Of a stretch of 64,000 nucleotides of DNA, positions 26,168-58,368 are shown piece after piece (within the stretch, counting starts at the first letter, position 1; every line of letters starts with the position of its first letter). A program made the translations under genes and the position numbers. This stretch comes from Styela clava (taxonomy: Eukaryota). The stretch is taken from positions 12,524,001-12,588,000 of the forward strand of contig NC_135264.1 of assembly GCF_964204865.1 (NCBI RefSeq), given 5' to 3'. A model generated the notes under the pieces. The model was not told the DNA's origin and did not search any database. It was given only the letters and a program-made list of their open reading frames with translations.

Positions 26168-27377
26168 AACCTGCCGTAAGTATAGCAGATATAGCAATGA
26201 ATAGCTCTCTTATATGTCACCGTTCTTAGGAGTTTATTCGTGATTATAATTTCATTTTATTTTTTTCAATACCACAGATCGAAGAATCCCGACCAATGCG
26301 AAACGAAGCCAGTGTCCAAATGTCTACAAAGAGATTGCATTTTTCGTGTTAAAGAGGGTAAATTGAACACTTGGGAAACAGTTAAATTGAGATGGGCATT
26401 GAACAAACACGTGGAACAATGCAAGTATGTCTACACTGAGTTTTACTACTACAAATCTATATGCAATCACATCATAGAGTAGTTTTTTTTTTTGACAGTA
26501 TGAAAGATTTCTCAACTTAACTGATATTTTATTGAAACAATTTAGAATTATCATTCTTTAGTTTAGAATTATACAATTCGAGTCGACCTTGCCGTCTGAA
26601 TATTGTAATTTATCTTTTTGATATTATCTTTCCGGCACTTGTTCTAGGAACAGGGTATCTGGAAAGAAATGTAGCAACGATATTATTCCGTGCAAATGTA
26701 GCCTCAAAGGCAAAACATTATGGGAAAAGGCTTATGTTTGGGTAAAGATCTCTGGGAAATTAGAAGTAAAAAAACGCTGGATCAGATTCACGGTATTTTG
26801 TTTTATGTATTTACAATTTTATAAAGACAATGAAAAGAGTTAGGGGTGATAGCAAAGGAAAAGTATGTTAAACTATCTATGACGTCATCTGACCTATGAT
26901 GTCACAAAATGTCATTCAATGTGCACTGTGTGGTGAACTTACATAACTGATAGGTTTCGAAATATATTTACATCATTAAAATATTTGAAACTTTGATCCG
27001 ATTAAATTACTAATAAATTTGGGTACAAGTGTTGTGCATTTTCAGACTTATAGTTTTATGTACAAGTTATGTTATTTGAAGCACTTTAACAATATATATC
27101 TGTATTTTTATGTTTTTTTTGGTGTGAAATATGCCTCCGTACAAAATTTATATATATTGTAAACAAGATCAAAAACATGAAAATAGAATATTGATAGAAT
27201 TAAAAATTACTAAATTATAAGAATGTGACATTTCAAACCTTCGAAAATGTTATTAATTCTCGACAAAGCTAGAGTTTTGATTAACAACAATTTATACTAT
27301 TATTCTTGACTTTTTAATTTTTTTTTCGGATCCCAGATGGATGCATGTGTGCAGTGGTTAATGTACCTCCTAGATAA
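26168..27377 (+). pseudogene. Cystine-knot paralog C2, probable pseudogene
   Basis: TATA box, ATG and nearly all of exon 1 are deleted (only aacctgcc/gtaagt remains at about 26168-26181). Exons 26278-26424, 26648-26792 and 27330-27377 are still open. The last acceptor is mutated CAG to CGG. Confidence 0.85.
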
Positions 27378-29571
27378 ATCAGCTTTCCTTTCAATTGCTG
27401 GCAAAAATTAGAACATTTAATTATGGTTTGAAACATTGGCGCTTATAATGTGTTTTTTGTTTGCTTTTTCTTAACGTTTGTTCAAAAATAATGTAATGCA
27501 TTGAAATCCTAAACTGTGAAAAATAAACTGTTATAGACTAATTTTGAATATTTTGACAATAAAATAAATTGTATTCCAGACAACATTGTTTGATTAGTTT
27601 ATAACGATAGTAAGGCTAGTTTGAGTAAACAATATGATACTTGTTTTTGTGGTTTTATTACAGAGCGAAAAATACTCAAAAAACAGTAACTTGTGAATTG
27701 ATGGACAAATGTAAATTGGTGGAAAAGCATCAATATTAACCCCCAAAAATAAGGTTTTAGAATTAAATATATACAAGGATTCAGAACTCTTCATTAATAC
27801 TCCACTATTGTCTTGTGTCCGCTAAAATTAGTAAAGAATACATGTTTCTAGTTGAAGAAACAAAAGTACGACACAATTTGCTTTTTATTTTTTATTTTAT
27901 TGGAAATCTGACAACTCAGGTATTGGTAGAATCAAAGAATCGAGTAATAGACAAAGGACCCAGGTCAAATTCTTCGAGTCTGTGACGTCATAATGAAAAC
28001 GCTGAAACACATGATATCGAACCTGTTGTAGCAATGCGCGCTCACCAATAATTGAGGTGGGAATTTGTGTGACTATTTTAAAAAACAAAACAAAAAACTT
28101 CATTTGGACTTGGATTCATTTTCGTTATTATTGATAATTTCACATTTTGTGTTGCATTGTCGATGCAGGCGGTATTTCCGACTCACCAGTACAATCTCGT
28201 ACATCTATCTGCTAACACCTCATTGCTCATGCAAAAATCCCAAAGTCACTCGTTGTTGTGTTTTTCTGTAGGATTAACATTGTTGTGAGCAGAATTCTTT
28301 TGCTATAGTCTGGAGAGGTTTTATATCAGTGATTTGGTTAACAACGAACAAAGTACAATTGTTTTTCATGATAAGAGCCTGTGATTCGGCATCAATGCAT
28401 TTTTCTAGCGATCTAATGACCGATCACATTATAATTTTATTAAATATGTTTTGTATACTTATCTTTTTAAAGTTGAGAATACATAACGAAGGCTTTTATA
28501 CGTGAATACACAATTGAATAAGAAATTAGGTGAAAAATTCGGTCCTTCCGTATGGTATGTGTACCAGGTTAGGGTTAGGCCATATTTTTATTCCGATTTT
28601 CCTTATTTTACTTCTATTCTACGAGTTCAGAGACTGTCTCTGTCAGCCACGTGAATATACCCACTGCCCATAGGCTTCCGTCACTTTAGACAACTTAATG
28701 TAAAGTAGTCGGAAAAAATTAGTTACCTCCATATTGGTACACATACTACTGGAGCGCCAAAAATTCCATATAAAATATCGAATTCCTATCAACTTTAAGT
28801 GCGGATTCAACTTTCGGTCTACTCGTATTTTAAATATATGAAAAAAAAAAAATTATTCACCGCTCCATGGCATTTCAAAAACAAAAATTTATTTTGTTCA
28901 TTTTGAATGACAATTATTTATTTTTTAATAAACCACGGCATCACAAAAAGTTCTGAACGGATTAAACTACAACCATTGGGAAGTATGGTTGAGATGGATT
29001 AGATGGAAATTTCAGATTTAAAAACCTCAATTTTTTATAATGAAAAATATGGTTTTTCATCATTTAGCCCTAAAATAGAATAAGTTAAGTGTTCAATATT
29101 TCAAGTGAAAAAATTGTTATTTTCAAAAATACGATAAAATCTATTGAATGTTCAAATATTTTAATATTCAATTCGGCTATTTAGTGGTATAATTGGTTTA
29201 AATGAGTTTTTGACAGTTAACATTTGTTTATATAAATTGTAACAAATACAATTTGAATCAGACCAACCGTCTGAAAATAATCTGACGTGAAGCTGTACAT
29301 TGTTTATCGCAGGTTGCAATCAATAGGACAGAGAGTGTTTTTTAAATCAAAACGATGCCATAAGGAATTACCTGCAAATAATAAAATTAATTTTCGTACA
29401 AATAAATACAGATGTCATAAACTTTTTTTCTTTCATTTCTCTCAAATATCGAAATTTCAGATTCAAAACAACTTTTTTCTTCAACAACATTTGCGTTTTT
29501 TTCATTCCAATCTTTCTATATAACGCCGATCTGCTGAGACAAGTTTCATATGCTCTTATTGTTGCATCACA

Positions 29572-31204
29572 ATGAAACTCTTTACGCTCGTGATTTTCGC
29601 CACATGTGTGGTGCTAAGTTCGGCGAACATGAAAAATAAGAAGATGCCATTTCCGGCATGCATAACAAAAGAACCACCGTGAGTATTGAAGACTAAGAAG
29701 TCCAATTGTTTAAAGAGTTATTATTACTTATCGATCTTTAGATCGGTATGTATGTTGATAAATATTTGCCTATTTGTCTGTCTGTTTGTCTATTAGATGC
29801 ACGCGATATCTCACAAAGGCGTGATTTAAACTGCTCCAAATTTTGCATGTGCATTCATCATATCTCGGACCAGACGCCTATTGATTTTGGATGAATTATG
29901 TCGAATAATTAGCGAGTTATTACTTAATTAGTGATGAGACACGCGGTGTCACTATAGAGTCATGAATCGAAACCGCAGTCTCTATCGATAAGTCTTCGGT
30001 CTCCGTCCGATATTCTCATTTTATTTGTTATTTTATTTTTTTTACAAATTTTTCAATTTTCTCACAAGGAGAAAATGCTGTTTATGGATAGCTGATCAAA
30101 GTGTTATATGCATATTTACACAATAATAATAAATTTTTTTTTTTTTTCAAACTCCAAGTTTAACGAAAATTAAATTAAAGTAAGTTTAAACCTACGCAAG
30201 TTCTGAATAATTTGTGTTTAATTAGTAATTATGTAACTAACTACCTTTCCTTGCGTTATGCTTTTTTGCAAATTGTGTTTGATTATTTATATGTTAATAA
30301 TTGCATGGTATTTATGTAATAAATTAATACGTAATATCTCAGATTAGAGAACCCCATGAAATGCACACAGTTCCCACAGTCCGTGAGGTGCCTTCATAGA
30401 TGGTGTACTTTTACGGCAGAAAAAGGCATGATATGGATAAACAATAAATTCGAAAGTGTAGAATTAGCGAAAAAAATCAAAGAACCAGTCGAAGAATGCG
30501 GGCAAGTATATATAGTTTGATTTTTTAGTGTGTATACGAAGAAAAATATTATCACGTTTTATTGTTTGTTTTTTTGAACCAAAATTGGTTATATTTTTTT
30601 TTCAATTTATATTTTGCCAAATTAGTCCAAAACGAATTTCTTTCTTCGATTTTGCAGAATAAAAATATGTTATTTTTTATTTTAAAATGTTTAATAAATT
30701 GACAAATAAATTAACTTTTCAATCAACTGAGATATCTTTGAAAATATTAAAAAAAAATTTTCCATTGTTTCCACATAACAGAAAAGCGGGGCAGAAATGC
30801 TCTGGTCATCGTTGCCCATGTAAGTGCAAAACTAAGGGAAAATGGATCTCGAGGGACGGTGTGGTAAAAATGAAAATCGATGGAAAATGGGTAAAATCTG
30901 TTCTGAAACCAGACATTCTCATCAGGGTAATTATCTATTATCGCCATAAATTTTTCTATATGTGTTTGTGTAGACTATACATGTATTTTTGATTTATAAA
31001 GCTAGGTAATGTAGGCCTCAAGTAAAAGGTGATATAGAATGGAAATGGAAAAAAAATAATAGAACGAGTTATGTTGCGATTGATTAGCACCCGTAATAAT
31101 TAAAAATATAATATCAATGTAAAAATAATAATTTTTTTTCAAATAATATTTATTGTATTTTATAGGTGCCAGGGGGTTGCACGTGTACTGAACCTGATGA
31201 CTAA
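29572..31204 (+). CDS. Cystine-knot paralog A3 (149 aa), diverged, requires a GC-AG intron 2
   Basis: Exons 29572-29678, 30343-30501, 30782-30926, 31166-31204. All 11 Cys kept; donor at 30502 is GCAAGT. Confidence 0.8.
29718..30020. mobile_element. HINE/DINE-like insertion in intron 1 of A3
   Basis: Absent from intron 1 of A1/A2; has a (ctgt)n-like microsatellite followed by a gatatctc...aaattttgcatg core. Confidence 0.55.
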
Positions 31205-33154
31205 ATTCGATGGCTGATGAAGCAGTTAAGATAAAAAAAAAAATTGAAATTTTTATTCGTAATTATTAATTTCTATTCGGAGCGGCATTATTTCTGGAGC
31301 AATATAAACAAATACAAGCAAATATGTGCATTTCGAAGTTGAGTTTTCTTTTCATATTGAAGCATTTCTATGAAATCCTTCATCAACAATCAGGAATTTA
31401 TGTTTATATTTTGACCATTTATATGTATCTTATATGTCACAAAAATAAATTAACACAAAATATATCGAGATGTAAAAACTTGGCATTATGATGGTAAAAC
31501 AAAAATAAAATTTGTATACCCGCAAAAATTACTCATGTACAAATGTACTACGAAGTATTACGTTGGTTTATTAAATAAATTTTATAATATAGATTATAGA
31601 AGTTCCATATTACTAGGAAATTAGTCAAATAATCTCCTCTTTCAATGTCATCAAAATTGTTGCCTATGTCAAACGGAAAACCAATTATAGGTCGATAAAA
31701 GCCTGGCTGTTCAAAATAATATCCAACAGGGGGAATCTTATATAAGAAAGGTTATCCTTGGAAATGTATGGATAGAAATCACAAAGCATGGCGTAAAATC
31801 TGGTAAAAATAATTGAATATTTATGAAATTCAATTAAGATATGAATTAGTAAACACCCTTTCATTAGAAAAGATTATCATCTTTTATTTAAACAACACTT
31901 ATATATTAAAAATAAGCATTTAAAAATATTGAAAGCAATGGTACTAGACACTTCAAGTTTGCACTGTGTTGAAAACAGTGTGCGAAAGTAATTTTAACAA
32001 GTTAATACAAGTGCTAGAATGAGACACCACATTGAATAAGATAGAATAAATATTGGCGCAAAGAAAAATAATTCAGGAGGGGTATGGCATATTTATACGA
32101 GAGAGAATCAACATTGGACAAGATACTATATGACATTTAGAATTTTCTTTAGCGATAATTAATTAGGATGTCCATAACGTTACTTGGAATTTTCAAGTCT
32201 AATCAGGAATGAACACGGACTGAAATATGTACCGGTATTGTCGTCTAAACTAAACAATGTCCCAATAACGATTTGACAATAAATACATAAAAAATTTAAT
32301 CTTGAAATGGCTCGTGTATTTCAATATTACCCAACATATATATATAGTTCAATAACGATTAAAACTGCTTTATTAATTGCAATTAATTTAATTGCTCAAT
32401 TCAATCGCATGTTAATGGAGTTGTCATTAGAAAAAGATTCAAATTTAACAATGCATGTCTGTGTTGAATAACCCACAATTTCCTAAACAAAAAATGAAAA
32501 AAATCATAAATTTGAAACATTTGAATGTCGTGATATTGTACCTAACGACGTGTGCGTTCTAAGTTAAATATATCATGTTTGAACTACACATATTTAACAA
32601 CAATTGCGGATTACTAGGTTAGAGATAAAATGTCAACTGGATTAGATATAACAAATCAAACTGTTTTACATATTTTTTCCAACATACTCAGACCGCATAA
32701 GTGGGAAAATGGCTAACACTTTATTACGGAAAACTCATCGTATAAATAAGACTATTATTATTAAACGGCATGAAAAAATGAAATCTAATTAAAACAGCAA
32801 AATAACAGTATGAATCGTTTTTGAAATTAATCGCAGCCCTTTTTATTAAAATCACAAATAGTCTACATAATTGAATAAAAAAATGGAGGATCAGGTAAAT
32901 ATAAAAACAAATATTGGGAAAAAGGGAAAGGTCCTTTCAGAACACGAATTGTTTATTACCCTTGAATTATTATTTTTGCTCTCCTCAGAGCGTTTTATAC
33001 AAAAAAATACATTCTCTCATATTATAATATATAAAAAAAAATCATAGTCAAGAATATACCTTACGTCATCGTGATTTGCCTTTCTTGTTGATTCATGTCT
33101 ATAAAAGTAAGCGAATGAGGTAAAGTATTCCGATGATCTATTGCTCGTAGCATA

Positions 33155-34329
33155 ATGAGAATTGTTCTGCTGCTGTGTATTGCTGCGTGTGCGGCAGTTT
33201 GCGTTACGGGTTCGTCTCGAAAGCTTCCATCTCTGCCGCCATGTTCTGTGAAAAGTTTACCGTAAGTATAAGATATATAGAGTATAAGAGGATAATAAAA
33301 CGTCAAGGTTTTTTTTCTTTCATATTTTTTGATGGCGACTTATAAATAACAAATGATTGACATGGTACGTTTTCCTGCTTTCAAACGTGATTTTTTCTAG
33401 TTTAAAAAATCAAAATGTTAATTTATAACCTTTTAGGTCGAAAAGACCAAAATCATGCCAAAAGGACAAAAAGTCGAAATGCGAAGAGAAAAAATGCTAT
33501 TTTAATATTAAAAAAGGGATACTCACTGAGAACGGAAAATCAAAAGCAGTTAATATTGTGAAAGAATTTATAGTAAATGGAAGCGAATGCGAGTAAGAAA
33601 TGTAAAAATATATTATGTGAGTGTGCGTTTGTGTGACTGTGTGTGTATGTGTGAACTCATTAGGTTTGACATAAAAATGATTTTCAAATGGCTTTAAATA
33701 CGGAAAAGCATAAATACAATTCATGAACAAATCCTAAATTACTGAATTTTATTTCAAGTAAACAACACTGGAATGGTCTAATAAAGCGATGCAGCAGTGG
33801 AATAATTCCATGCAGATGTCGAAACTGGGGTGTTAAGACATGGATAAAAGCTTGGATTAGTGAGAAGAAAGATGGGAAGTGGATGTCTGTTAAAAAACCG
33901 GTTAAAGTAAATGTAAGTATGTTGCAAGTCCTTGCTTTTTGAATAGAACGTGTTGTACACATTCTAGTTTTTTTTTGTTTATATATATATACTAACATGT
34001 ATGGTTTGTGCTTTGATTTTTTGAGGTACTGACTTAATATATTTTTAATATATTATTTAATTGGTTTTATTTAATTTATCCTTAGGTTTATTCACCGCTT
34101 ATGTTTGATCCATCTTCAAAAACTAACACGATCGACCCACAAAGTAATACTATATGAGTCATACTTTTAGCTTACAATACGCGGCAATTTGGAATAGACC
34201 AAATAACGTAATGTGCTGGAATAATCCGGATTGGTTATTCAATAAAACTGATCTGATTATAAATTTCTTTCCCAGATTCCAGCTGGATGCATGTGCGCTG
34301 AGCAGAACATCCTAACAAGGAGTTTGTAA
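33155..34329 (+). CDS. Cystine-knot paralog B3 (156 aa), diverged
   Basis: Exons 33155-33261, 33437-33592, 33759-33912, 34276-34329. Open frame, 10 Cys kept, 4-aa insertions in exon 1 and in the hairpin loop (ISEKKDGKW). Confidence 0.88.
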
Positions 34330-35367: not shown

Positions 35368-37377
35368 ATGTACATTTTCGGAGTTTTGCTGTTTGTCATC
35401 TACGCATGCACTTTTGTGGCATCGAGAGGTAAATTCATATGTTTTTGGGTTGTGCATGGAAGTTAGGATCTAAATTAAATTTGAAATAAATAATATTGCA
35501 ACATATGGTGCTTGAAAGGAGGAAAATATCGAAAATGAAGATTTGAAGGTGAATAAAACCGAGTTTTTTTTTCCGAAGCCACAAGCAGATATTCGTTTGT
35601 TTATTCCGGATCTCGGAGACCAAAGAGTTGTCGAGATGTTAGTGGATCAAGCGGATTGTATACTCTATATCCTGATGGATTAAGACTTGGAGTACAAGTT
35701 TATTGCGATATGGCAACCAATGGAGGAGGCTGGACCGTGAGCATACTATACTATATTGATGTTTCTCAAAAGTTACGAAGTTTTACATTTGCTATTATTT
35801 GAAAAAAATACAAGTTGGTACCTTGAAATACTGGAGAAACAATAAAATTTAAAATTCTGGCCAATGTTTACCTACATAGTTTAATATGGTATATATTTTA
35901 TTAACATGTGATAAACATAACTTCAATTGCCTTTAAGGTATTTCAACGTCGCCAAGATGGTTCAGTGAATTTTTACAAAAATTGGAGTAGCTACAAATAT
36001 GGATTTGGATTAAAAACAGGAGAATTCTGGCTTGGTATGTTTTGTATGTTAGTTCAAAGATTTTGATAGGATACAGAAGTAAATTGGTTATTAGATTATT
36101 GGTCTATTGCTATGTTGTGTAAAAGATATTTTACTAAAAGTAGGCAAATTTAGACATAGTGTTCTAAGGGCGTAGCCAGCCCAAAATTGGAGGGGGTAAT
36201 AGCTCTACTTCGCTGTCGAAGTTGCCTGAGGCGCATAACCGCGTATTTTCATCTATCTCGTTTGGTTCATTTGGTGAACAGATTATTGATATTAAACCAG
36301 GAAACGGTTTTTAGTGAACCGTTCAAGAATGGACGAAAATGATGATGAAAAAAGCGTAGGATTTTATGTCTCACTGCAAATGCCGTAAAATTGCCGCACT
36401 GAAAAAAAAAAATTGAAAATTTTCGAAGGGAACATGGCCCCTCAAGACCCCCTGGCTACGCCTATGCTGTAATCGACATACGCCAATATAGCTCTCTACA
36501 AACTTCTTCATGGTTATTCGTTTAACTTTTAGGATTGGAGGTCATGCGAGACATCATGAAGGGTAAAATTTTTGAGCTCAGAATTGACTTGGAAAATTGG
36601 ACAGGAAAAAAAGGTTTTGCAAAATATTCGTGAGTAATATAACTTGACCTTCTTTGTTTTTATCTAAAAATAATTAGGGTCACATATTACGCAAGGCTAA
36701 GGTTTCTCCTATAGTCGTTCTACGTTTCTTAGCCCATAATATAAATTCTTTGACGCGTAGTTTGTTATGGAAGTATCTGACGTACCGACTAGGCTATATT
36801 ACGATTTTTAATTATTTTATCCGATTCAGTTCCAGCTCAGTTTGTTGTAGTTTTTGCATTACTATTATTCTTTTTTATAAATCATACTTAGATTTACTTT
36901 TTGTGGGCCAATCAGATTATTGTCAAAGCAGAAACAAACATAGCTAAATATGTCAGCGATACAACCGATTATATGTGATCTCTTTTTGGCTCGTTAAACT
37001 TGACACGTTTTATGAAATTTGCTAATTTTTCATGTTACTTTTTCAGAATATTCTCCATCGGTGACGAATGCGTCGGTTACCGGCTTAATGTGAGAGGATT
37101 TAGTAGTAGCCACAGTAAATTGGGAGACTCGATGGCATGGCATAACAATCAGAAATTTTCTACAAGAGACAGGGACAATGATTCGGCTTTTACAAAATGT
37201 GCATTGCGTCACAAGGGCGGTTGGTGGTATAACGAATGTCGTCACTCAAACCTCAACGGAATTTACTGGAACGGAGGAAATTATAAATCTGTATGGGCGG
37301 ATGGCATTGATTGGTTTCATTGGAATTATGGTGGTCCTTTTTATTCCCTGAAACGCACCGAAATGAAATTTCGTTAA
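35368..37377 (+). CDS. Secreted single fibrinogen-related domain protein (MFAP4/ficolin/tachylectin-5-like), 247 aa
   Basis: Exons 35368-35428, 35579-35736, 35938-36034, 36533-36629, 37047-37377. Signal peptide and canonical FReD motifs [72 protein letters not shown]. Confidence 0.93.
36167..36463. mobile_element. MITE in FReD intron 3
   Basis: Inverted termini GGCGTAGCCAG / CTGGCTACGCC. Confidence 0.6.
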
Positions 37378-38071: not shown

Positions 38072-38480
38072 AAAAAAAGTAATAAAACTATCGATATTAA
38101 TATTTGAAAATGTCTTTGAAATCAAGTTTACTGTCACTTAAAATCCTTAAGCATAGCTACTTTTTGCATAGAGGAGACCTTTATTGTAATTACTATCACT
38201 CTTAGTAACTTGATCTAACAGCTACACATTTGGAAACTATGTCTACTGTAGATGCTGCATTTTATCCCAACATTCTCTTATTTATTTAAATGTTTCCAGC
38301 AGACCCCATAGTTTCGTTTTTGAAGTCACGTTTATATTTATAACATAGCTTAAGTTGACACAAAAGAAATTTTCAACAATGTCTACTTTGTATAGAGATA
38401 TAAAAAAGAAAAACAAAAATATATAGTATTTCTGATAAATTCAGTGAATATAAAAAATTAAAAAAAATTAAAATTTTCGA

Positions 38481-41419
38481 CTATGAACTGGATTTTTTGT
38501 CGTCTTTGTCATCTTTGTCATCTTTCTTTTTTTTGTCATCCTTATTATCTTTTTTATTATCTCTTTTTCTTGACTGTCTTTTTCTTGGGGTTCGAGGCGA
38601 TCTTTGTCTTGTGGGTTGATTTGGCTGAGCATATGGATTATAAAACATACTTCCCATACCACCCATAGCGCCAAAACTTCTTTGCATGCCTTGTGAATAA
38701 AGATTTGCTGATGGGTCTTGGTATTGAGGGTAACTTGGTTGTTGAGAATAGCCTTGAGATCCTTGTTGGTATGATGGGTAATTTGAATACGGACTATATT
38801 GTTGTTGATATTGAGGTTGTCCCCAAAAATTGAAGTTTGGCCTTTGTGGTGTGCTAGTTTGCTGAACATTAGGTGCTCCTTTTTGACATTTGCATCCATC
38901 TGGTACCTGAAATTTTCAAAATAAACAAAGATAAATCAATTGTACCACAGCAGAAGTAATGTGAAAATATTTTACCAACACAACAATTTATACATAATTG
39001 TCATTCATTAATTTAAATTGACTACAGGTTGGCCATAAACAAATTATTTCAATTTCAATTATGAGTGGTGTAAGACTAATTATAAAAAAGTCGTGAGTAC
39101 TTGTAATTAAAGTCGTTGGAAAATTATTTAATATAGCAAAATAATAAAAATTAACCAACTTACCATGATGTATAATGTTTCAAATCTTATCATCTGAGAG
39201 AAATGTGGATTTTGCATCAGATATGGAAGAAGCGTCAAGAAAGAGTTGCCGTTAGACGATGCTCCACCTTGGAACATGAGATACCGGAGCATGGCTGAGC
39301 TGGCCATGCCTCCTTGAGCGTGGCCCATTGGTGCCTGTGGCATATGATTTTGTGGCATTTGTGGCATATGGCTTTGTGGCATGTAAGTTTGGGGATATTG
39401 GTAACCTTGTTGCTGTTGCTGCTGCTGTGGGTAATAGTAAGTATTCTGGTACTGTTGAGTAGGCTGCTCATGTTGATTTTCCGTGGAAGATGAATCATAT
39501 GTCTCAGTGTTACCATCGTCCAAACTTCTTTCCTGTCCTGGATCTTCCTCTTGGTTTTCTTCCATTGGTGCAGAGGGTGCTGGGGGTGCAGGATAGTACT
39601 GTTGGCTATTCATAGGAGGTGAGAATGGATGACCACCTGCTGTTGAACCGTATGGTGGCCCTGCCATGTTTGTACCTACTACCCCTTGAGTGGAAGGATA
39701 ATAATTTTGCTGCGGGGGGTAGAAACCTTGTGGGTTTTGTTGTGGTTGGGGGTAAGCAGATGAAGGGTATCCATTCATTTGTGGGAATCCACCTTGAAAC
39801 TTTTGTGCTTGAAGGTTTTGTGCCAGCATTTGGAATCTCATCATATCAGACTGAGAATTTTGGCTTCCGGTGGGGTAGGATGGTGCTTGTTGCTGGTTTG
39901 ACGGATAATAGCCTTGCTGTCCTTGGAATTGCATCATAGGATTATATTGATGAGATTGTCCAGCACTGTAATACTGAGCAGCACCTCCCATACCGTATCC
40001 GTTGCCAGCGTTTCCAATCTCTCCAGATCTAACTTTAGTTTGGGCCTTTGGTTTGTTTTCGTCACTGTCATCATCAACATGTCCAACTTCTCCGGTCCTG
40101 GCTTGTGGTTGATAATGTTGGAATTGCTCGAAGTTGCTTGGATATTGCTGGCCTCCAGTGTACTGAGATCCGTATTGGTTTGTTTGCTGCTGCTCTTGTG
40201 GTTGCTGATAGACTGTTGATACTCTCAGTCCTTCAGAATTATAAACAATGAAGTAATTTCTTTCAATTCTATACTGCTGCTTGCAGAATTTTGCCGAGTC
40301 GCTTTCACAATGACATTTTTCTTCATTTCGACACGAACAAGGCTGGTTTTTTATTCTAAAAAGAAAATTTAATGCAATTAAAAACAAATATATGAATGAA
40401 CAATTCAAACTTTTAATAATTTAAGCGAGAGCTCAATGTACTTAGAGTAGTATACATTAAAGTGCTATATGGCACAGATAATTATTTGTAATTGGAAAGA
40501 AATACACAGTAGTAATATCAAATTTTAATAGTTTACGCAAGAGCTTTATGTTCTTAGAGCATATTATATATCAAAATACTATATGGCAAAGTCATCTATT
40601 TTTATGTAAAAATATCATTTATTATTATTGGTACTTACGAGCAAACTTCTCCTTTTATTTCTTTAAAAGAATAAAGAATTTTTCGTGAGGAGGTTTTGAT
40701 AAGATTGGGATTGAATCTGTAGTACATTGATTGAGGATGTTGAGTAACCCCAGTTGTGGGATTGAAAATGCATTCTCTCTTTGCACATTCGCCTTTTTTC
40801 GATTCCGCCCAGAGACTCTTAGAATTTTTTGTACACATGTCTTGTTGTTTTCTAAAAATATAATACAATAATGTTAATGATATAAATAAGTACATGAATA
40901 GTAAGCAATAGTCTGATATAAACAAAAGCATGATTGCCAATTATGGCATATGAAATGAAACAGTGAAATTTATATTTACTCTAAAAACGAGCTCATACTC
41001 ATTTATTTGATATTTATGCATATATTTAACTTCACTTACGCATCACACACATCTATCTTTTTTCCTCCTTTGTTTCGAGCCCGACGCTTTCCTGCTTTGG
41101 CTACTATCTAAAAGATAAATTAGTACACACGTCAAGTAAAAAAATTATTATATATTAGATAATTCAATTTGTTTCCAAAAATTATTTTGCACAGTTAGCG
41201 TAGTTTAAAAAGTAAAGACCTAATAAAATACAATACATTTGATAACGAAATCCGAATTTGCAACTAGCAGACATTCAGTAACTTATTTAGATATATCTAT
41301 ATATTTACTGCATAAAAACAAAGCAACATAAAAAATTGTCTTACCTCAAAAGGGGAATTAGCATTGCAAATTCCAAATAACGCCAGAAAGAGCGCAAAAA
41401 CAATTATTTTCTTCATCAT
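38481..41419 (-). CDS. Gene E: 657-aa secreted cystine-knot family member with a large Q/P/Y/G-rich insertion and a K/D-rich tail
   Basis: Exons 41419-41345, 41107-41040, 40851-40639, 40355-39164, 38906-38481; phases 0,2,2,0; all GT-AG; total 1974 nt. Signal peptide MMKKIIVFALFLALFGICNA, basic site GKRRAR, CAKREC, EVC|S, FCKQQY, and a last exon starting VPDGCKC. Confidence 0.9.
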
Positions 41420-42542
41420 CTTCAATAAAATCGTATTCAATTCAAAATTAAGAAACTTTTAGTATATTCTTATATATCAGTCAATTTGAAACTGATTTGA
41501 ATACAAATCCCGAATCCTTATATACTAACAGCCTTGTCACGTTTGTGCGTCATAAAAATAATTATTAGATGTTTGTCGTTGATATTGGAAATTTAGACCC
41601 AGTATTAAAACTTGATTGTGTACGTCAATACCGTGCTAATTGGTCAATTAAATCAATGTCCCACGGTTGTGCGCGCTAGTGATTGGTCATATCATTTTCC
41701 AATAATTTCTAATGATTAAACTGTATAATTTCTGCAAAATCATTTACAAAACACAACATAAGCAATAAGGAAAATGGAACGGGTAACGCAGGTCACCGAA
41801 GATATATTTTATTTAGTTAACCTAACTCAGTCTTAGAGTTTCACAATTTGACATTGTTTTATCATCATTGTTTTTATTGCCATCAAATTTCTTTGTTTCA
41901 ACTTTTAATGATTGTGGTTTCTTGTGGTTTTCGACCACACTGATCGTGATTAAGTTTGAACAAATATGAAAATTGTAACGTATGTAAAGAATTTTGGCAC
42001 CTGCATCGAAAACACCCCTATTTGGAATCATTATATTTGAAGTTTAATTTCTATCAAACCGTTTTACTTGAATATTTGTTTTAATTAAATACCAATGATA
42101 CATTTTTCAAATGAGACGGCATTTGAATCATTAACGGCACAAAATGCTTGGTCGGCATTGCGTTTTTTTTTCTCAACTGCTTGAGTGGCACTTTAGGATT
42201 ATTGGACACGAAATGGACCAAGGGATCGTTTTGTTGTTATGTTGTTGTCAACAAAAATTCTCTTTACCTACTTGACTAACTTGACTTTAGTGGTTAATGA
42301 TTATTGTTGTCGCTAGAGGGCTAGCAATTCTATTTATTTCAAAAATTTCTGTGAGATTTTGTGTGAAGATGGCATTAAAATGAAAAATTGCGCACCTAGT
42401 GGCGGTTCCGCATTCGCTTTCTGGGCACTTTATTACTTGTTAATTGTTTGAAACTGTTTGCACACATTTTTCCAATTTATTAATTTTATACAGAATCGCT
42501 TCAATTAAAAGGGAATTTTCTAGCTAAAACTTGGAAAATCTT

Positions 42543-52187: not shown

Positions 52188-55100
52188 ATGGAAGATATCC
52201 CCAACAATTTGGATGACTATGGATTTTTAACATGCCGTGGATTTATCCTCGACAAAAATTACGTAAGTCAAACAAACTCACAGTCTGTTGATGATCTTCT
52301 TCTCGATGTAAACAAAAACTCTCGGCCTATCTTTGGCAAACGACATCATGATGATGTCAGAATTGACAGAAGCAGAAAACAGGGTGGAAATTTACACAGT
52401 CGATTAAGTACAAGTCAACCAAGCTTAAACAAATGCAAAAAAGAAGAAAAACGAACAATAAAAGTACGTTTTGAAATTAATGATATACATACCAAGCAAA
52501 GCAAAACTGACGTAAATGAAAGTAGAAACAATAACGTTACTGACACGAAGCACGCAGTGACGAAAGATACAAACAAAATGAAAAATTTAAAAGAAGGTAT
52601 CATTTCACAAAAACCTTCTGAAGAAAAACGGAAAAATAAAGAAACTTGGTGGAAGCATTGGTTTCGCTCAAGTAAAAGCAAACATAAAGAAGAAACAAAA
52701 CAAGAAAATTTTGTTAAATATAAATCAACTGATGTTAAAAATACAAAGTTACACAAAGCTATTTACGATGTCAATGAAAGTGTTGAAATTCTTGAAAATA
52801 TAAGTTTTAGTGAGCTGGATGGTAATATTGAGCAGGTATCAGTTGATCCAAACGCTTCTGTTTATTCGACAAATAAATCAGAATGTGAGATTACAAGTTC
52901 AACGCAAAAATGTAAAACTGAATCCAAACGAATGTTTGAAGTCAAAAAACTAACCAGCAGTCCCTATATTAAGCGAAGAGTCGCATCAGCGGATAATCTG
53001 ATTTTTGATCCTGGATTACCCGAGCGAACCAATATTAGACAAACTTCTTCAACAAACAGTCGAACAAAAAACAGCAGTCAAAATGCTAAGTTTTCTTTCA
53101 ACTCAGAAGATTCGGAAAATTTTTTGAGAAAGTCTAATTCTATCTCAAAGAAAAAACAGAAAAATCAAGAAGTTTTGAAGTCAACTAGGAGCCATGCGTC
53201 TATAAAGCCAAAATCGAGATTCTCTTTTCGACTCGGGCGGAAACGAAATTCAATTCAACTTCCATTAGAAAATGAATATATGTCAGAAAGTTTAGTACAA
53301 AATGAAAGCACGTCGAAAGCCTTTCATGACTATGATGACATTGAAGGGGAAACACATTTGAAGAGTTTATATGTTCCAGATGGCTCGATGTGCTCTGCAA
53401 GTTCAGTTTATGAAAAATATCCCGCAAACAAAGGATCACAAAGAAAAGTTCTGGTACACATACACACCAAGTACGTATACTATCTGCATTTTTGTGCAAA
53501 ATCTATTTTATCGATACTAATCTAATAAATTCTTTTGAATCGCAACTTGGTCTCGTGCGCCATCTTGCGTAACTTGAAGAATATGTTTTTTTCAATTCAA
53601 ACGATATCATTAGAAAAATTCGCTTTTTTTATTTGAATCTGTGAAGTCTACGCATTTTTTTAAAATTAAAAATGAAGAAATATTTATTTTATTTACTCCT
53701 CAGAGAAGAAATTCCAATAAGAGATGGAATTCCGCAGTGGGTTGACCTTTCCTATCAATGCACAAGTGCGTTGCAAAGGCGCCACAGAAGAGAAGATGCA
53801 AACCAATCAAGGCGCTATTTAATCAGACCACTGGTTGAATCTTCATTCATTGGTGAAATAGAAAATTCATCTGCACAAATTGATAACAAACAGACACAGA
53901 AACAAGATGATGCACAGACGTAAGATATTTATTATAAAGTAATATATAATAGTATTTTATCAGATCGCTAAGTTACTGTTGTAATATATCGTGTTTTATA
54001 CAAATTTACTGATACATTCAAATAGGAAATGACATCATAATTACAACGTATAGGTACAGGTTTTCATTGTGGCGTCGCTATTTTGATATCTGGATTAATG
54101 TGACTGCTTTTTATAGTATTTTGTTATTGTAATTTTTGTTGCTTGGTTGCTTAGGTGCTCAATTATTGCTCAAAATTTCTATTCAACTAAAACCTTACTT
54201 GAATAGTCTTAAGTTTTATCTAAACATAATATAGTTATTTCAGTTGAGAAAATATGTGAAGGTTTTAAAAAAAAAAATTAAAAGCTGGGGCCCACGCACT
54301 CACTCACTCAGAGGTGAAGGAGAACCATATTTGAGTGAAGTTTTGGTGACCACGGAAATTCAAAGAGCTACTGAAACTAGAGGAAAAAGTTGGCACATTA
54401 TAAGCCAGTAAATATCAATAGACGCGATACTTGAAATCCTTAAAATCTGCACAACAGATATGGGGTTGGTGATTGCGATGAATCAGTTGACAGTTGACAC
54501 ATATAGTGTTGTTAATAAAAACCTAAGTTTTGAATAAATTTAGAAACGGTATTACGAAGACGATTTCCGAGAACGTGAGAGAAAAAGCAGACGAAAACAT
54601 TTCAACCGTTGAAGCTTTAGTACACTACTGCCCAACTAAAGTCGATTTAAACAATATCAACAACGAAGAACCAAACTCAAGTGAGGCATTGATATTAATT
54701 GACATGTAATATCATTGTTAGTCACCATGCCAACGATTGTAACAATTTTATGGTCAATATTGGCATGAAAATATATTTCATTTGGTTTCAGCATCAAAAA
54801 ATGAAAATGACGAAGTCGTTACCAGTTCAAGTGAGCCATCATATTTTGAAGTAACTACGGACGGACTGTCAAAAGGTAAAAATTTAATAAAATACCAATT
54901 TTTAAGCAATATATATACATTAACAGATATATAGATGAAGACTTAGAATTACCGTAATGTTTTTGGTCACAGCAGCACTATTTCAAGTATAATCTTTTCA
55001 GAGAAAAGCAGCACATCAAATTGTTCCGTAGAACGAGGACATCTAAACCAAATAGAAACCGAAAGAAGTTTTGCATTGACGGGAATGGCTACAGATGAGG

Positions 55101-58100
55101 TACAAAAATAAAATCAAAAAACGAAAATTGGTTGAAATATGACGTAATGGTATATTACTCAACCTTCTTTAAGTTGACATTCCTGATGTCTTCTGAACCA
55201 CACTGGCATTATATTATTAATTTACGTGGTGGTACAAAAATTTATTACAGATACCACAAATAATTGCGAGAAGGCATCCATATTTGGCAGCATCCGAGCC
55301 CGTACGACACATGGCTAAATGTTTGAGACAAGCTCCAATTTCCCGGCCAAAAGAAAAATTATCTCCGGTCGGCAGTAATGCAATACACGAAGGAACTGCT
55401 GTACAACAACATAGAAGGTAATTGTTACGATTTTTATTTTGAGTGCGACAATGTAAACGAGTAGAAGCATAGTCATGGAATTCTGAATCTTTCTCAGTAT
55501 CAGGCGGTGTAAAAGTTCATCAGAAGATGTTCCTGCTGAAGAACGACACATCAGCGATTCCGAATACTCTGTCTCAGAGTATACACCTTTGAAGATACCC
55601 CAATTGAAGGAAACAGCTTTTGGTATGTTTACAGAATAAGTGGCAAAAAATTTCAGTTTCATTTTCAAGCAATAAATTTATTGTTTTGGTGGGATTTGAT
55701 TAAGTAACACGCGCTCACTCACCATTACTACGTACCATTGGCTTATCAGCCAAGCACATGGACCAAATGTCTGAATCTGCGGCTACTCTCGTACTGAGCA
55801 GAATTACTATCGCAACAACACTACGTCAGTAGGGTAAAACTAACCCGTCTCTAAACAAATTGACGGACAACTACTGAAATCGTAGGGGAACGCTTATGAT
55901 ACCGAATTATAGTAGTGCAACAAACGGGTTTTTTATATTTGTACATCAATTACGATGTATTTGCAACATACTTAATAAATTTTTTCTTATATTAACTTCA
56001 TAATAAAAAGTACTGTTATTTTATAGGATTGCTAAAGCATAAGAAAACATCGCCAACATCTGCATCAAACGTTTCGTTGGAAAGGTAATCTATTGCTAAA
56101 TATTCGCTTTTTTAAAGCCAATTGCCCTTAGACAATTACAAAGTAATATTCAGGTATCTATTGCGTCTGTAATATTTTATGTATGCTTGATCGCATAAAG
56201 AAATATGCAAGAGTATATTCCAGTTTGGTAATGAGCAAATTAAAAAGAACAATAGCGTATTGTATCGAATTATATATATTATATTTACCTAATAATTGTT
56301 TTACAACTTCGCTCCATCACTAGCGGCCATTAACACGATTAGAGCAGTTTAAAATTTTAGAGCTACCATACAAAATTTATAACGCCCCGAAGAGATTATA
56401 TTGCAATACTGAAAATAGATTACATCTAACGATATTCAACATTTCAGAATCAAGGAAACTAATGATATTTTAGTGAGAATGAAGGAACGAATTCAACGCT
56501 TAGAAAGCATTAGCGACGAATCCAACTCGATCAAGTCAGAACAAACGGTATGATGCATAGTAAAAAAAAATAATCTCAACATCATCACAAACGTGAAAAA
56601 TGTTATGTTAATAACAACATTGTAATTTCAGGTATTTAAACAAGAAAGTTCTGCGATGTCATCGTGTAATAAACAAATGAAAGCATCTATTAATATCCCA
56701 ACATGCTGTATATCACAAAATCTTCCAAACATGGCGTCATTACCACTCCCTTCCGTGAAATCAAGAATAGAAACAATATCAGATGATGATAAAAATAGAT
56801 ATATTCATAAAAATTATGGGAAAAGTGAAATCGCAGATTTGAAAACAAAATATTCAAAACAAGATGACAAGTTTAGAAGGCTATTGTATCAAAAGATTAA
56901 AGAAAGAAGCTCACAAAATGGGGGTGTATCGCAGGTAGAAGTGCCACCAAATCCTGTTGAATCACAATTTACACCAATATCAAACTATTCGACATATGTG
57001 AGTTGCGACATACATATACCCCAGGGTAAAAGTACAATGACAAATGACTATGTAAAACACGAAAACACAAACATGGTTGAGAACAAAGTCATAGAATATT
57101 CTCCACAACCAGTAGCGTCCCCAACACGACGAAGACTGCGAATTATGCCATTTACCTTGCCACTTCCAAAAAGCACAAGGTACAGCAGTGAAGGAATATT
57201 CGGGGATAGCCAATTTGGTATTGATCATGAAGATATCGCGGGTTATGAAATTGATTTACGGGAAACTCAACTTCACGAACTGTCGGATTCATTGTCTATC
57301 AACTGCAATGAAGTAATAACAAAAAATCAGCAGAAGCAACAGACCAACATATCGAATAACAATCTTGAAGTTGTGTATTCTGCTGAAACTCAAGAGAAAC
57401 ATGATGATAAAACTGGAACAAAAATTGAAAATATTGCAAACTTTTCAACAAAATCAGATAAAAAATATGAAATTGAAAACTCAGCTTATCAATCGAACAA
57501 CCATCAATATGACAAAACGACTAATTTGAAGAAAATAGAATCTCAAGCACAAGTGTATCCATATATTACTGCTTACGTGAAGCCAAAATTGTCGCAGATA
57601 AGTGAGATACGGCCACACACGAATACCATTCAATATAATGAAAACGAGTCACCTATTTGTAACGAATCCAACGAATTCGACGTTTCTTATACATATTCAA
57701 CTGACTCAAGCATTCAAAACACTAACAATGAAAACGGTTGTGGTTACCTTGACGAGATTACTGGTCAATATTTCGAAAAATCCGAAGAAAAATCCGATGC
57801 TGAAAATAAGAGTAAGAACAGATTACAAAACATTATTTTTCAGCAGGAACAGATTAAAACAACAATTTTGAATGAAATGCACCTTGTCAGGTCAAGATAT
57901 TTTCAATCAGATGAAAATGAAATATCTCAAAATTTGTCGAGATCGCATGAAAACACGCAAATCGGAAAAAAATTCAGTCGAGATCAAATATTTTCCTCTA
58001 CAATGTCAGATATGGAGGAAGAATATAGTTCTGCCGATGACGAAACTCTTTGTGATTCAGTAGAAACAATTTCCGTACTTGGAGCGAGCGACGATAGTAT

Positions 58101-58368
58101 GGTTACTCAACAAGGAAGCGAGTCATCCTGTTACAGCCCGATTAGGTGTAATAATAACTCTGAATCGAAACTAAACTCATGTTTTAACAACTCAATTGCA
58201 TCTGGTTACAATTACATGTCTGATATTGACAATAGCATGCCAAAGGCTATAGATATCAACCGCAAAACTTGCGCTGCTCAAAGATATTGGAGAAAGAATC
58301 CAGGCAAACGAAACAATAATTTGAACAAATTTAACTACGTTTGTGATGATTATGAGACCGACTTATAA
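52188..58368 (+). CDS. Large uncharacterised, probably disordered S/N/K/E-rich protein (about 1366 aa, 11 exons; 5' end uncertain)
   Basis: Phase-compatible GT-AG exons 52188-53470, 53704-53919, 54312-54407, 54544-54680, 54792-54875, 55002-55099, 55251-55417, 55498-55622, 56027-56084, 56448-56547, 56632-58368 join the 445-aa and 570-aa ORFs in one frame. Ends in YETDL. Confidence 0.8.
55691..55856 (-). pseudogene. Degenerate 28S rRNA 3'-region fragment (includes the sarcin-ricin loop) in an intron
   Basis: Reverse complement reads gagacgggttagttttaccctactga...gtaattctgctcagtacgagagtagccgcagattcagacatttggt...gcttggctgataagccaatgg, matching conserved eukaryotic LSU rRNA with substitutions. Confidence 0.85.

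What the first reader, a model, noticed from the sequence alone, without database searches (positions are those of the whole stretch)
39164..40355. About 340-residue prion-like domain inserted inside a cystine-knot hairpin
Seen: in gene E the Cys of FCKQQY and the first Cys of VPDGCKC are 377 residues apart, versus 35 in paralog A. The extra sequence is Cys-free and Q/P/Y/G/S/M-rich with two acidic patches. It lies within one exon between strand-like YFIVY and IRFETLYIM, and the flanking intron phases are the family's own. The same loop takes small indels in B3 and A3. Inference: a cytokine-like fold repurposed as a disulfide-closed clasp displaying a large disordered loop, for example a self-assembling or crosslinkable extracellular material. 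Domain searches would probably miss this split domain.
Basis: partly seen in the sequence, partly recalled or inferred. Interest (0 to 1): 0.9.

Follow-up and report, generated by a model that had tools for sequence, protein, structure and literature searches.

The report
Knotted secreted protein with disordered insert
A sea-squirt (Styela clava) gene encodes a secreted, cysteine-knotted protein, probably shaped like nerve growth factor, with about 340 cysteine-free residues (roughly 300 floppy and glutamine/tyrosine-rich, then a conserved 40-residue helical module) spliced into one of its two beta-hairpins; three neighbouring genes share the design, which suggests an extracellular material rather than a hormone, though no function has been tested.

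Summary
Window 39164-40355 (minus strand) is exon 4 of a five-exon gene, Styela clava LOC120333994. My model is identical to RefSeq XP_039257364.2 (657 aa).

The exon is a 397-codon open frame. Between Cys143 and Cys521 there is no cysteine. The stretch is Q 19.5%, P 11%, G 10%, Y 9%, S 9%, with two acidic patches. The flanking introns have phases 2 and 0, as in the short paralogs.

The host family is about 20 tandem genes for 140-160-aa secreted proteins with 10 invariant cysteines, found only in S. clava. It matches no Pfam model. The fold evidence is weak but all points to a neurotrophin-like cystine knot: a language-model lead, an AlphaFold2 model with two long hairpins, weak structural matches that are all neurotrophins, and NGF-like cysteine spacing.

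New findings:
- Gene E is not unique. Three paralogs 85-100 kb upstream (F1, F2, F3) carry Cys-free inserts of similar composition in the same hairpin, and F1 has one in the other hairpin too.
- The last 40 residues of the insert are a conserved Met/Leu-rich, predicted-helical module. The middle keeps only its composition.

The function as an extracellular, self-associating or cross-linkable material is inferred, not shown. RNA evidence could not be obtained.

The parts
41345..41419 (-). Gene E exon 1: start codon and signal peptide (n-region MMKK, hydrophobic core, ...CNA|NS)
   Evidence: It matches P0001/P0023 residues 1-25. The signal peptide is judged by inspection.
41517..41525 (-). TATA-like box (tatataagg) about 100 nt upstream of the ATG
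   Evidence: Read. It is a consensus match only; function was not tested.
41040..41107 (-). Gene E exon 2: basic stretch with an RRAR furin-type motif and the first mature cysteine (Cys46). This intron split is extra relative to the short paralogs.
40639..40851 (-). Gene E exon 3: Cys54, Cys70, Cys75 and Cys118 with the first hairpin. It is homologous to exon 2 of the short paralogs and ends in a phase-2 intron.
   Evidence: F2/F3 match it at 41% identity, E 2.6e-7.
40208..40355 (-). Exon 4, N flank (residues 119/120-168): cysteine cluster C-x-C-x5-C-x-C-x7-C, then the strand-turn-strand YFIVY-NSEG-LRVSTVY
   Evidence: 53% identical to F2/F3. AlphaFold2 puts strands at 146-149, 154-158 and 161-164 (low confidence).
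39314..40207 (-). Exon 4, low-complexity middle of the insert (residues 169-466, 298 aa): Cys-free, Q/P/G/Y/S/N/M-rich, two acidic patches, predicted disordered
   Evidence: (pLDDT 28-49). No similarity to F2 beyond composition. No other copy in the genome.
39194..39313 (-). Exon 4, conserved Met/Leu-rich module (residues 467-506): motifs ML.Y.M and FL..LP.LM.N, predicted helices
   Evidence: E against F2 scores 60; 5000 shuffles give 23 +/- 4.9 with a maximum of 48. AlphaFold2 predicts helices at P0001 468-481, 488-497 and 500-503, pLDDT 50-67.
39164..39193 (-). Exon 4, returning strand MIRFETLYIM (residues 507-516), followed by a phase-0 intron
38480..38906 (-). Gene E exon 5: VPDGCKC (terminal C-x-C, Cys521 and Cys523), a second Q/P/S/Y-rich tail, a basic stretch, a Lys/Asp-rich end and the stop codon
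29572..31204 (+). Reference short paralog C1 (LOC120334373, P0002, 149 aa, 4 exons), used to define the family framework and the fold
152..34329 (+). Eight short paralogs of the family (A1, A2, A3, their duplicates B1, B2, B3, and C1, C2). Each has 4 exons and ends in GC.C.

Best explanation
Gene E (Styela clava LOC120333994) is an intact gene for a 657-residue secreted protein.

Its cysteine framework comes from a Styela-restricted tandem family of small secreted proteins with 10 conserved cysteines. These proteins most likely fold as a neurotrophin-like cystine knot with two long beta-hairpins.

In E and three nearby paralogs (F1, F2, F3), the second hairpin has been opened. It carries a Cys-free, Q/P/G/Y/S/N-rich low-complexity segment of 64 to about 300 residues. 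In E, F2 and F3 this is followed by a conserved Met/Leu-rich helical module of about 40 residues. All four genes also have low-complexity tails. F1 carries a second insert in the first hairpin.

Proposed mechanism (inferred):
- The disulfide-locked knot holds the two ends of the loop together.
- Like other knots of this type, it may pair into dimers, giving a compact covalent node.
- The floppy Tyr/Gln-rich loops and tails, with the short Met/Leu helices, provide many weak contacts that let the proteins condense or assemble outside the cell.
- They could then be cross-linked through tyrosine oxidation, or through glutamine-lysine bonds to the Lys-rich tail.

What is shown: the gene structure, family membership, composition, predicted disorder, the conserved module and the recurrence in paralogs. 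What is inferred: the knot fold, dimerisation, assembly and cross-linking.
For: Gene and exon:
- The exons have canonical splice sites, and the model is identical to RefSeq protein P0023.
- A 397-codon open frame is very improbable by chance in this AT-rich DNA.
- The two RefSeq versions differ only by 4 substitutions and 2 in-frame indels.
- The exon has no strong in-frame internal splice sites.

Family membership:
- The same three intron positions and phases.
- All 10 core cysteines are present at matching spacing.
- The family profile scores 11.7 bits against P0001, E 1e-5 for a single comparison. Only 5 of 2000 composition-preserving shuffles reach the N-domain score.
- The gene lies inside the 230-kb cluster.

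Fold:
- The nearest Atlas clusters are all NGF, Spaetzle or IL17.
- AlphaFold2 of P0002 gives two long hairpins, 56-86 and 110-137.
- The top 4 of only 6 hits among 48,161 chains are proNGF, NGF, PDGF-B and sclerostin.
- All 21 listed re-aligned hits are neurotrophins covering the whole core.
- The Cys spacing I-31-II-7-III-9-IV-38-V-x-VI resembles that of NGF. My count for the family is; the NGF spacing is from my own knowledge.

Recurrence:
- F1, F2 and F3 have the same extra-cysteine pattern and Cys-free low-complexity inserts of similar composition.
- The C-terminal module is significantly conserved between E and F2.

Disorder:
- pLDDT is 28-49 across the loop.
- The Atlas's own model has pLDDT 0.36.
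- The loop falls on the disordered side of the charge-hydropathy boundary.
Against:
- The fold matches are individually weak (Z up to 3.1, Foldseek E at least 0.44) and the model is mediocre (pLDDT 62).
- Pfam NGF, IL17 and Spaetzle do not match, and hhalign against Styela's own IL-17 genes aligns only 13 terminal columns.
- Pairing of the two halves was not demonstrated.
- The loop middle evolves with no detectable sequence constraint. The young pair F2/F3 shows 6 nonsynonymous and 2 synonymous changes, which is compatible with neutrality.
- Aromatic residues are not more evenly spaced than by chance, so a tuned sticker-spacer pattern is not evident.
- There are no orthologs outside S. clava and no literature.
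Confidence: 0.45

Rival explanations
1. E is still a signalling ligand (cytokine or neurotrophin-like). The low-complexity loop and tails only modulate it, for example by anchoring it to the matrix or tunic, limiting diffusion or masking a receptor-binding hairpin tip.
For: - The host family looks like a fast-evolving tandem array of small secreted knot proteins, typical of ligands or immune effectors.
- All core cysteines are retained.
- A furin-type RRAR site follows the signal peptide, as in pro-ligands.
- The insert sits where neurotrophins carry a variable, specificity-determining loop (my own knowledge of NGF loop 4).
Against: - More than half of the protein is low-complexity sequence, in the loop and the tail.
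- F1 also has an insert in the other hairpin, so both receptor-facing tips are occupied.
- There are no dibasic sites in the loop for its removal.
- No receptor is known for the family.
Confidence: 0.2
2. The insert is a tolerated, largely neutral low-complexity expansion in a permissive hairpin of a rapidly evolving gene family, with no function of its own.
For: - The loop middle shows no similarity between E and F2 beyond composition, and its length varies from 64 to 298 residues.
- The F2/F3 differences are mostly nonsynonymous.
- The hairpin accepts small indels in the short paralogs.
Against: - Long stop-free frames are kept in four paralogs in AT-rich DNA.
- The inserts are not microsatellite-like. 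Only tiny repeats were found, and there is no internal duplication.
- The composition is kept in the inserts of all four genes and in E's tail.
- A 40-residue module inside the insert is significantly conserved.
Confidence: 0.2
3. The domain is a disulfide-rich fold other than a growth-factor cystine knot. The insert then sits in a long hairpin of an unclassified fold.
For: - No sequence-profile link to any knot family.
- Structural Z-scores are below the level at which the tool says a fold match is reliable.
- The cysteine-bearing stretches of the model have pLDDT below 50.
Against: - Three weak lines of evidence all point to the same superfamily.
- The two-hairpin architecture ends in C-x-C and the six-cysteine spacing resembles NGF.
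- An earlier follow-up in this scan reached an NGF/coagulogen-like fold for another Styela family (s1-810842, not independent evidence).
Confidence: 0.25
4. The insert is removed from the mRNA as a hidden intron inside the exon, so the protein is a short family member.
For: None found.
Against: - The exon has no GTRAG donor. The only weak donor/acceptor pairs would shift the frame.
- The open frame is kept over 1.2 kb, and also in F1-F3.
- Both RefSeq versions keep the insert.
Confidence: 0.04

Closest known systems
Neurotrophins (NGF, BDNF, NT-3, NT-4), and the same fold in Spaetzle and horseshoe-crab coagulogen
   Same: - Secreted, about 110-130-residue mature domain with two long twisted beta-hairpins.
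- A terminal C-x-C and a six-cysteine spacing like NGF's.
- The only structural matches, weak as they are, are neurotrophins over the whole core.
- Coagulogen shows that this fold can serve as a clottable material (my own knowledge; PDB 1aoc is in the weak Foldseek list).
   Different: - No sequence-profile match to Pfam NGF or Spaetzle.
- Four additional conserved cysteines.
- None of these known proteins carries a low-complexity insert of hundreds of residues inside a hairpin.
- Coagulogen polymerises after a peptide is cut out, not through a disordered loop.
IL-17 family (Pfam PF06083)
   Same: A terminal strand plus G-C-x-C motif, a hairpin between two Cys clusters, and large tandem expansions in Styela.
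   Different: - The 32 or more genuine IL-17 loci lie elsewhere, none in this cluster.
- The profile-profile comparison aligns only 13 columns, probability 6%.
- This family has 10 conserved cysteines and an additional N-terminal hairpin.
Cnidoin and similar elastomeric matrix proteins (Hydra nematocyst wall)
   Same: The architecture is shared: a disordered Gly/Gln/Met-rich segment combined with small cysteine-rich cross-linking domains. Cnidoin self-assembles spontaneously (PMC4321713). E-type proteins are also Q/G/M-rich, with Met-rich motifs.
   Different: - Not homologous.
- Cnidoin's Cys domains flank the disordered part at the two termini, whereas here the disordered part is a loop closed by one knot.
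- Cnidoin's repeats contain cysteine and are regular. E's loop is Cys-free and non-repetitive.
Prion-like low-complexity domains (FUS or yeast-prion type)
   Same: Q+N 26%, G+S+P+Y 38.5%, few charged or aliphatic residues, predicted disordered.
   Different: - Extracellular, and topologically closed by disulfides.
- Interrupted by acidic patches and helical Met/Leu motifs.
- Aromatic spacing is not regular.
- No PLAAC score or assembly assay is available.

Membership tests
Styela clava 10-Cys secreted tandem family (this cluster, unnamed) | N-terminal signal peptide | tested here: met
   Exon 1 encodes a typical signal peptide. Judged by inspection only; no predictor was run.
Styela clava 10-Cys secreted tandem family (this cluster, unnamed) | Ten invariant cysteines at conserved spacing (EC-x6-CS-x5/6-C-x-C ... 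G-C-x-C) | tested here: met
   The alignments plus my intron-anchored count. E has all ten, plus two extras (Cys127, Cys143) that it shares with F1-F3.
Styela clava 10-Cys secreted tandem family (this cluster, unnamed) | Three introns at fixed places with phases 2, 2, 0 | tested here: met
   E has these three plus one extra phase-0 intron after the signal peptide.
Styela clava 10-Cys secreted tandem family (this cluster, unnamed) | Detectable sequence similarity to the family profile | tested here: met
   hmmsearch of the A2 profile against P0001 gives 11.7 bits, E 1.1e-5 (Z=1), in two pieces, 40-135 and 510-523. 5 of 2000 shuffles reach the N-domain score. The match is weak: the genome-wide profile search at E<=0.01 did not list E.
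Neurotrophin / NGF (Pfam PF00243) | Match to the family profile | tested here: not met
   No Pfam hit for P0001, P0002 or the exons. The PF00243 genome scan finds nothing in the cluster.
Neurotrophin / NGF (Pfam PF00243) | Neurotrophin fold (two hairpin pairs around a cystine knot) | tested here: inconclusive
   AlphaFold2 model with pLDDT 62 and two long hairpins. Matches are Z 2.3-3.1, rmsd 5-7 A, 70-81 residues aligned, all to neurotrophins. Foldseek E is at least 0.44.
Neurotrophin / NGF (Pfam PF00243) | Knot disulfide connectivity I-IV, II-V, III-VI | not testable with these tools
Disulfide mapping is needed.
IL-17 (Pfam PF06083) | Match to the family profile, or to Styela's own IL-17 genes | tested here: not met
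   PF06083 finds 32 loci over its cut-off elsewhere and none in C19:12.46-12.71 Mb. hhalign of A2 against A4 gives probability 6.4% over 13 columns.
Spaetzle (Pfam PF16077) | Match to the family profile | tested here: not met
   No hit in the genome or in the proteins. The tool warns that nothing rang anywhere, so this negative is weak.
Prion-like domain | Q/N-rich, low-charge, low-aliphatic composition over at least 60 residues, predicted disordered | tested here: met
Prion-like domain | Formal PLAAC/PAPA score; self-templating assembly | not tested
   No such predictor was at hand. An assembly test needs an experiment.

The most novel reading that the evidence does not exclude
A four-gene subfamily of neurotrophin-fold proteins in a tunicate has been converted from ligands into building blocks of an extracellular condensate or biomaterial (tunic, clot, adhesive or egg coat). 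In it, disulfide knots act as covalent nodes that close long prion-like loops emerging from one or both hairpins. Short conserved Met/Leu helices would act as specific association motifs. This would be a new architectural principle for secreted low-complexity proteins.
Probability: 0.3. Interest if true: 0.75.

Novelty: new variant of a known kind. Interest (0 to 1): 0.55.

Why it matters
Low-complexity, prion-like domains are studied almost entirely inside cells and as free chain ends or linkers. Here one sits outside the cell as a closed loop, pinned at both ends by a disulfide-rich domain that looks like a growth-factor knot.

The design recurs in four paralogs, with insert lengths from 64 to about 340 residues. 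That makes a natural series for asking three things:
- how loop closure and valence affect condensation or assembly;
- how a ligand fold can be turned into a material, with coagulogen as the one known precedent;
- what the tunicate-specific knot families do.

It also shows that these families and their split members are invisible to standard domain annotation. The RefSeq name, 'glutenin-like', reflects only the composition.

Tried and rejected

Tests that gave no usable result:
- Two-fragment complex test, P0023 36-172 with 498-534: no verdict, score 0.02. This is evidence neither way.
- AlphaFold2 of full-length P0001 with the 9-row alignment: pLDDT 42, too poor to judge whether the halves pair.
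- A fragment-per-exon alignment (A1) was misaligned by MAFFT and was discarded.
- MAFFT alignment A3 shifts E's cysteines by one cluster relative to the introns. I prefer the intron-anchored assignment.

Searches that found nothing:
- Pfam on the exons and proteins.
- PDB sequence searches.
- Atlas search on the loop.
- Literature searches by accession or LOC number and by topic.

Hypotheses tested and not supported:
- Tandem repeats in the insert: only tiny ones.
- Loop against tail, and the two loop halves against each other: no similarity beyond composition. This rejects an origin by internal duplication.
- A source gene for the insert elsewhere in the genome: none found.
- Regular aromatic spacing: not found.
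- Selection from the F2/F3 pair: too few changes, 6 nonsynonymous and 2 synonymous.
- A hidden in-frame intron in exon 4: none plausible.
- IL-17 membership: rejected.
Full report
WHAT IS THERE

The finding lies on the minus strand. Window 39164-40355 is a single 1192-nt exon flanked by ttttag| and |gtaagt, holding 397 codons with no stop.

The window is AT-rich (about 31% G+C) and stop codons make up 6% of all triplets. A frame of this length has a chance of about 2e-11 per start. The exon itself is 44.7% G+C.

Together with four other exons (41345-41419, 41040-41107, 40639-40851, 38480-38906, all with canonical AG/GT) it encodes a 657-residue protein.

A search with the exon by reference returned P0001 (XP_039257364.1, Styela clava, 652 aa, automatic name 'glutenin, high molecular weight subunit DX5-like'). 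The cluster look-up returned P0023 (XP_039257364.2, LOC120333994, 657 aa), which is identical to my model. The two versions differ by four substitutions and two in-frame indels.

Procedure. Exons were searched by reference, and all full-length work used the database proteins P0001 and P0023. The one joining step was a local script that compared the exons with those proteins.

THE OBSERVATION

- Cys143 (FCK) and Cys521 (DGC) are 378 positions apart, with no cysteine between them.
- The 338 residues 169-506 are Q 19.5, P 10.9, G 10.4, Y 8.6, S 8.6, N 6.5, M 5.6%.
- Two acidic patches are present.
- Intron phases are 0, 2, 2, 0.

THE HOST FAMILY

On the plus strand the window carries eight short paralogs (A1-A3, their duplicates B1-B3, and C1, C2).

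Database proteins for the short paralogs were recovered: P0002 = C1, P0003 = A1, P0007 = A3, P0008 = A2, P0024 = C2, plus P0004, P0006, P0009, P0010 and P0025. All are S. clava 'uncharacterized' proteins of 140-186 aa.

They share a signal peptide and ten invariant cysteines, at P0002 positions 30, 43, 52, 57, 88, 95, 102, 104, 142 and 144. They also share three introns of phases 2, 2, 0.

A profile search of the genome finds about 20 genes in C19:12.47-12.70 Mb and two on C18. Neither phmmer over 1.84 billion representatives nor a profile search over 5.8 billion proteins finds a convincing member outside S. clava.

IS E A MEMBER?

Yes, though a divergent one.
- It lies inside the cluster.
- It keeps the three introns at the same places and phases.
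- It keeps all ten cysteines at matching spacing: EC-x6-CS-x5/6-C-x-C ... G-C-x-C.
- The family profile scores 11.7 bits (E 1.1e-5 for one comparison). Only 5 of 2000 composition-preserving shuffles of the N-domain score as high.

Anchoring on the introns, E's Cys118, 125, 133 and 135 correspond to the family's Cys88, 95, 102 and 104. The homologous span, from Cys135 to Cys521, is therefore 386 positions against 32-38 in the short paralogs. The net insertion is about 350 residues.

WHAT FOLD?

No Pfam family matches any exon or protein, and there is no PDB sequence match.

Pfam IL17 finds 32 good loci in this genome, none in this cluster. Pfam Spaetzle and NGF find nothing relevant. A profile-profile comparison with an alignment of Styela's own IL-17 domains aligns only the last 13 columns, probability 6%.

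Fold-level evidence is weak but all points one way:
- The nearest Atlas clusters for P0002 all carry NGF, Spaetzle or IL17 (score 0.90).
- AlphaFold2 with the 8-row alignment gives two long hairpins, 56-86 and 110-137 (pLDDT 62 overall, 70-88 in the hairpins).
- Of 48,161 PDB representatives only six reach Z 2. The top four are proNGF, NGF, PDGF-B and sclerostin (Z 2.1-2.7).
- In the second look, all 21 listed entries are neurotrophins. They align model residues 44/52-139 to chain residues 8/14-107 (Z 2.3-3.1, rmsd 5-7 A).
- The spacing Cys57-31-Cys88-7-Cys95-9-Cys104-38-Cys142-x-Cys144 resembles NGF's 15-58-68-80-108-110. The NGF numbers are from my own knowledge.

I rate 'neurotrophin-like cystine knot' at about 0.65. 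It is not a member of the NGF, Spaetzle or IL-17 families by any sequence criterion.

WHERE EXACTLY IS THE INSERT?

It lies in the second hairpin, between knot cysteine IV and cysteines V/VI.

The N flank keeps a strand-turn-strand (YFIVY-NSEG-LRVSTVY). The low-confidence AlphaFold2 model of P0001 also draws this as a hairpin. The insert therefore probably opens the returning strand a few residues after the native turn, rather than the tip itself. This is not settled.

E IS NOT UNIQUE

I fetched that region (L014-L016) and searched the genome with E's exon-4 N flank and with exon 3.

Four genes share the special cysteine pattern C-x-C-x5-C-x-C-x7-C-x-Q-[QK]-Y:
- E.
- F2 and its near-identical duplicate F3, 53% identical to E in the flank.
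- F1, 38% identical.

F2 and F3 have a 396/397-codon open frame (381 of these codons are exon) in which about 210 Cys-free residues separate the flank from LELKSLWVQ-VPYDCKC. The phase-0 intron is absent there. Their tail contains four or five GGGGNPMAALM repeats.

F1 has a Cys-free 64-residue Q/T-rich insert in the same hairpin and a 237-residue Q/Y/G/T-rich insert in the first hairpin.

All inserts share the Q/N/S/G/P/Y/T-rich, Cys-free composition.

STRUCTURE WITHIN THE INSERT

Between E and F2 the middle parts (298 against 170 residues) show no similarity beyond composition: score 67 against 65 +/- 10 for shuffles.

The last 40 residues are clearly conserved: score 60 against 23 +/- 4.9, with a maximum of 48 in 5000 shuffles. 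The motifs are ML.Y.M and FL..LP.LM.N. These are exactly the helices AlphaFold2 predicts at P0001 468-481 and 488-503, pLDDT 50-67.

Similar Met/Leu motifs recur elsewhere in the loops and tails.

The insert has only minute tandem repeats and no internal duplication. It has no other copy in the genome and no plausible hidden in-frame intron.

HOW IT MOST LIKELY WORKS (INFERENCE)

The knot pins both ends of a long floppy loop. It may also dimerise, as such knots usually do; this was not tested.

Multivalent Tyr/Gln-rich loops and tails, together with the short hydrophobic helices, would drive self-association outside the cell.

Abundant Tyr, Gln and the Lys-rich C-terminal end would allow oxidative or transglutaminase cross-linking.

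There are precedents for the logic, though not for the architecture. Coagulogen is a neurotrophin-fold clotting protein (my own knowledge). Cnidoin is a disordered Gly/Gln/Met-rich elastomer flanked by small cysteine-rich cross-linking domains that self-assembles (PMC4321713).

Rivals are listed separately: a matrix-tethered ligand, a neutral expansion, a different fold, and a spliced-out insert.

LIMITS

- Pairing of the two halves is untested. The full-length model has pLDDT 42, and the fragment complex test gave no verdict.
- The F2/F3 comparison (6 nonsynonymous, 2 synonymous changes) says nothing about selection.
- Aromatic spacing is not more regular than chance.

VERDICT

- The structural reading is plausible but only weakly supported.
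- The functional reading is untested.
- The feature is real, is annotated in RefSeq only under a composition-driven name, is undescribed in the searchable literature, and recurs in a small subfamily.
- I class it as a new variant of a known kind and give it moderate-to-good interest.

Noticed in passing
L014:612-3220 (G000:C19:12460612-12463220), plus strand: Gene F1 is an E-type family member with two Cys-free low-complexity inserts: 237 aa (Q/Y/G/T-rich, with TGYP-type repeats) in the first hairpin and 64 aa (Q/T-rich) in the second. Its terminal exon reads RPSGCEC at about 3152.
   Followed up: partly
L014:7281-8989 and L015:8650-9840 (G000:C19:12467281-12468989 and 12478650-12479840): F2 and F3 are near-identical duplicates about 10.85 kb apart. 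They are E's closest paralogs. They lack the intron before VPYDCKC, and their tail carries four or five GGGGNPMAALM repeats after an acidic run.
   Followed up: partly
window 36979-37374 (+): An open frame encoding a fibrinogen C-terminal-like domain sits between paralog C2 and gene E. I recognised the motifs by eye (...STRDRDND...GGWWY..C..SNLNG.Y...).
   Followed up: no
window 1-14300 versus 14349-29000 (+): A segmental duplication of about 14-16 kb carries three family genes each (A1-A3 and B1-B3). A1/B1 and A2/B2 exons are nearly identical, whereas A3/B3 have diverged.
   Followed up: partly
window 27310-27350 (+): The terminal exon of B3 (IPDGCMC...) is preceded by ...ttttcgg instead of a cag acceptor. 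It may be a damaged splice site or a shifted acceptor.
   Followed up: no
window 30500-30510 (+): Intron 2 of paralog C1 uses a GC donor (GG|gcaagt). This is required to reproduce RefSeq protein P0002.
   Followed up: yes
G000:C19:12485745-12486161, 12493054-12493467, 12500889-12501302: Some family copies have exon-2-type and exon-3-type matches inside one open frame of 156-166 aa. These copies apparently lack the internal introns.
   Followed up: no
window 52188-53525 and 56656-58368 (+): Two long open frames (445 and 570 aa) are rich in S/K/N/E with no family resemblance. They are probably exons of an unrelated gene.
   Followed up: no
G000, contigs C1, C2, C3, C5, C8, C10, C19:11.93 Mb: At least 32 loci match Pfam IL17 above its cut-off, mostly in tandem clusters on C3 and C5. 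This is a large IL-17 expansion, separate from the family studied here.
   Followed up: partly
P0005 (XP_070536995.1, Ptychodera flava, 4073 aa): A hemichordate giant protein matches residues 27-61 of P0002 (the N-terminal Cys motif) in 15 separate stretches, E 2.7e-12. It may be a shared small cysteine module or a compositional match.
   Followed up: no
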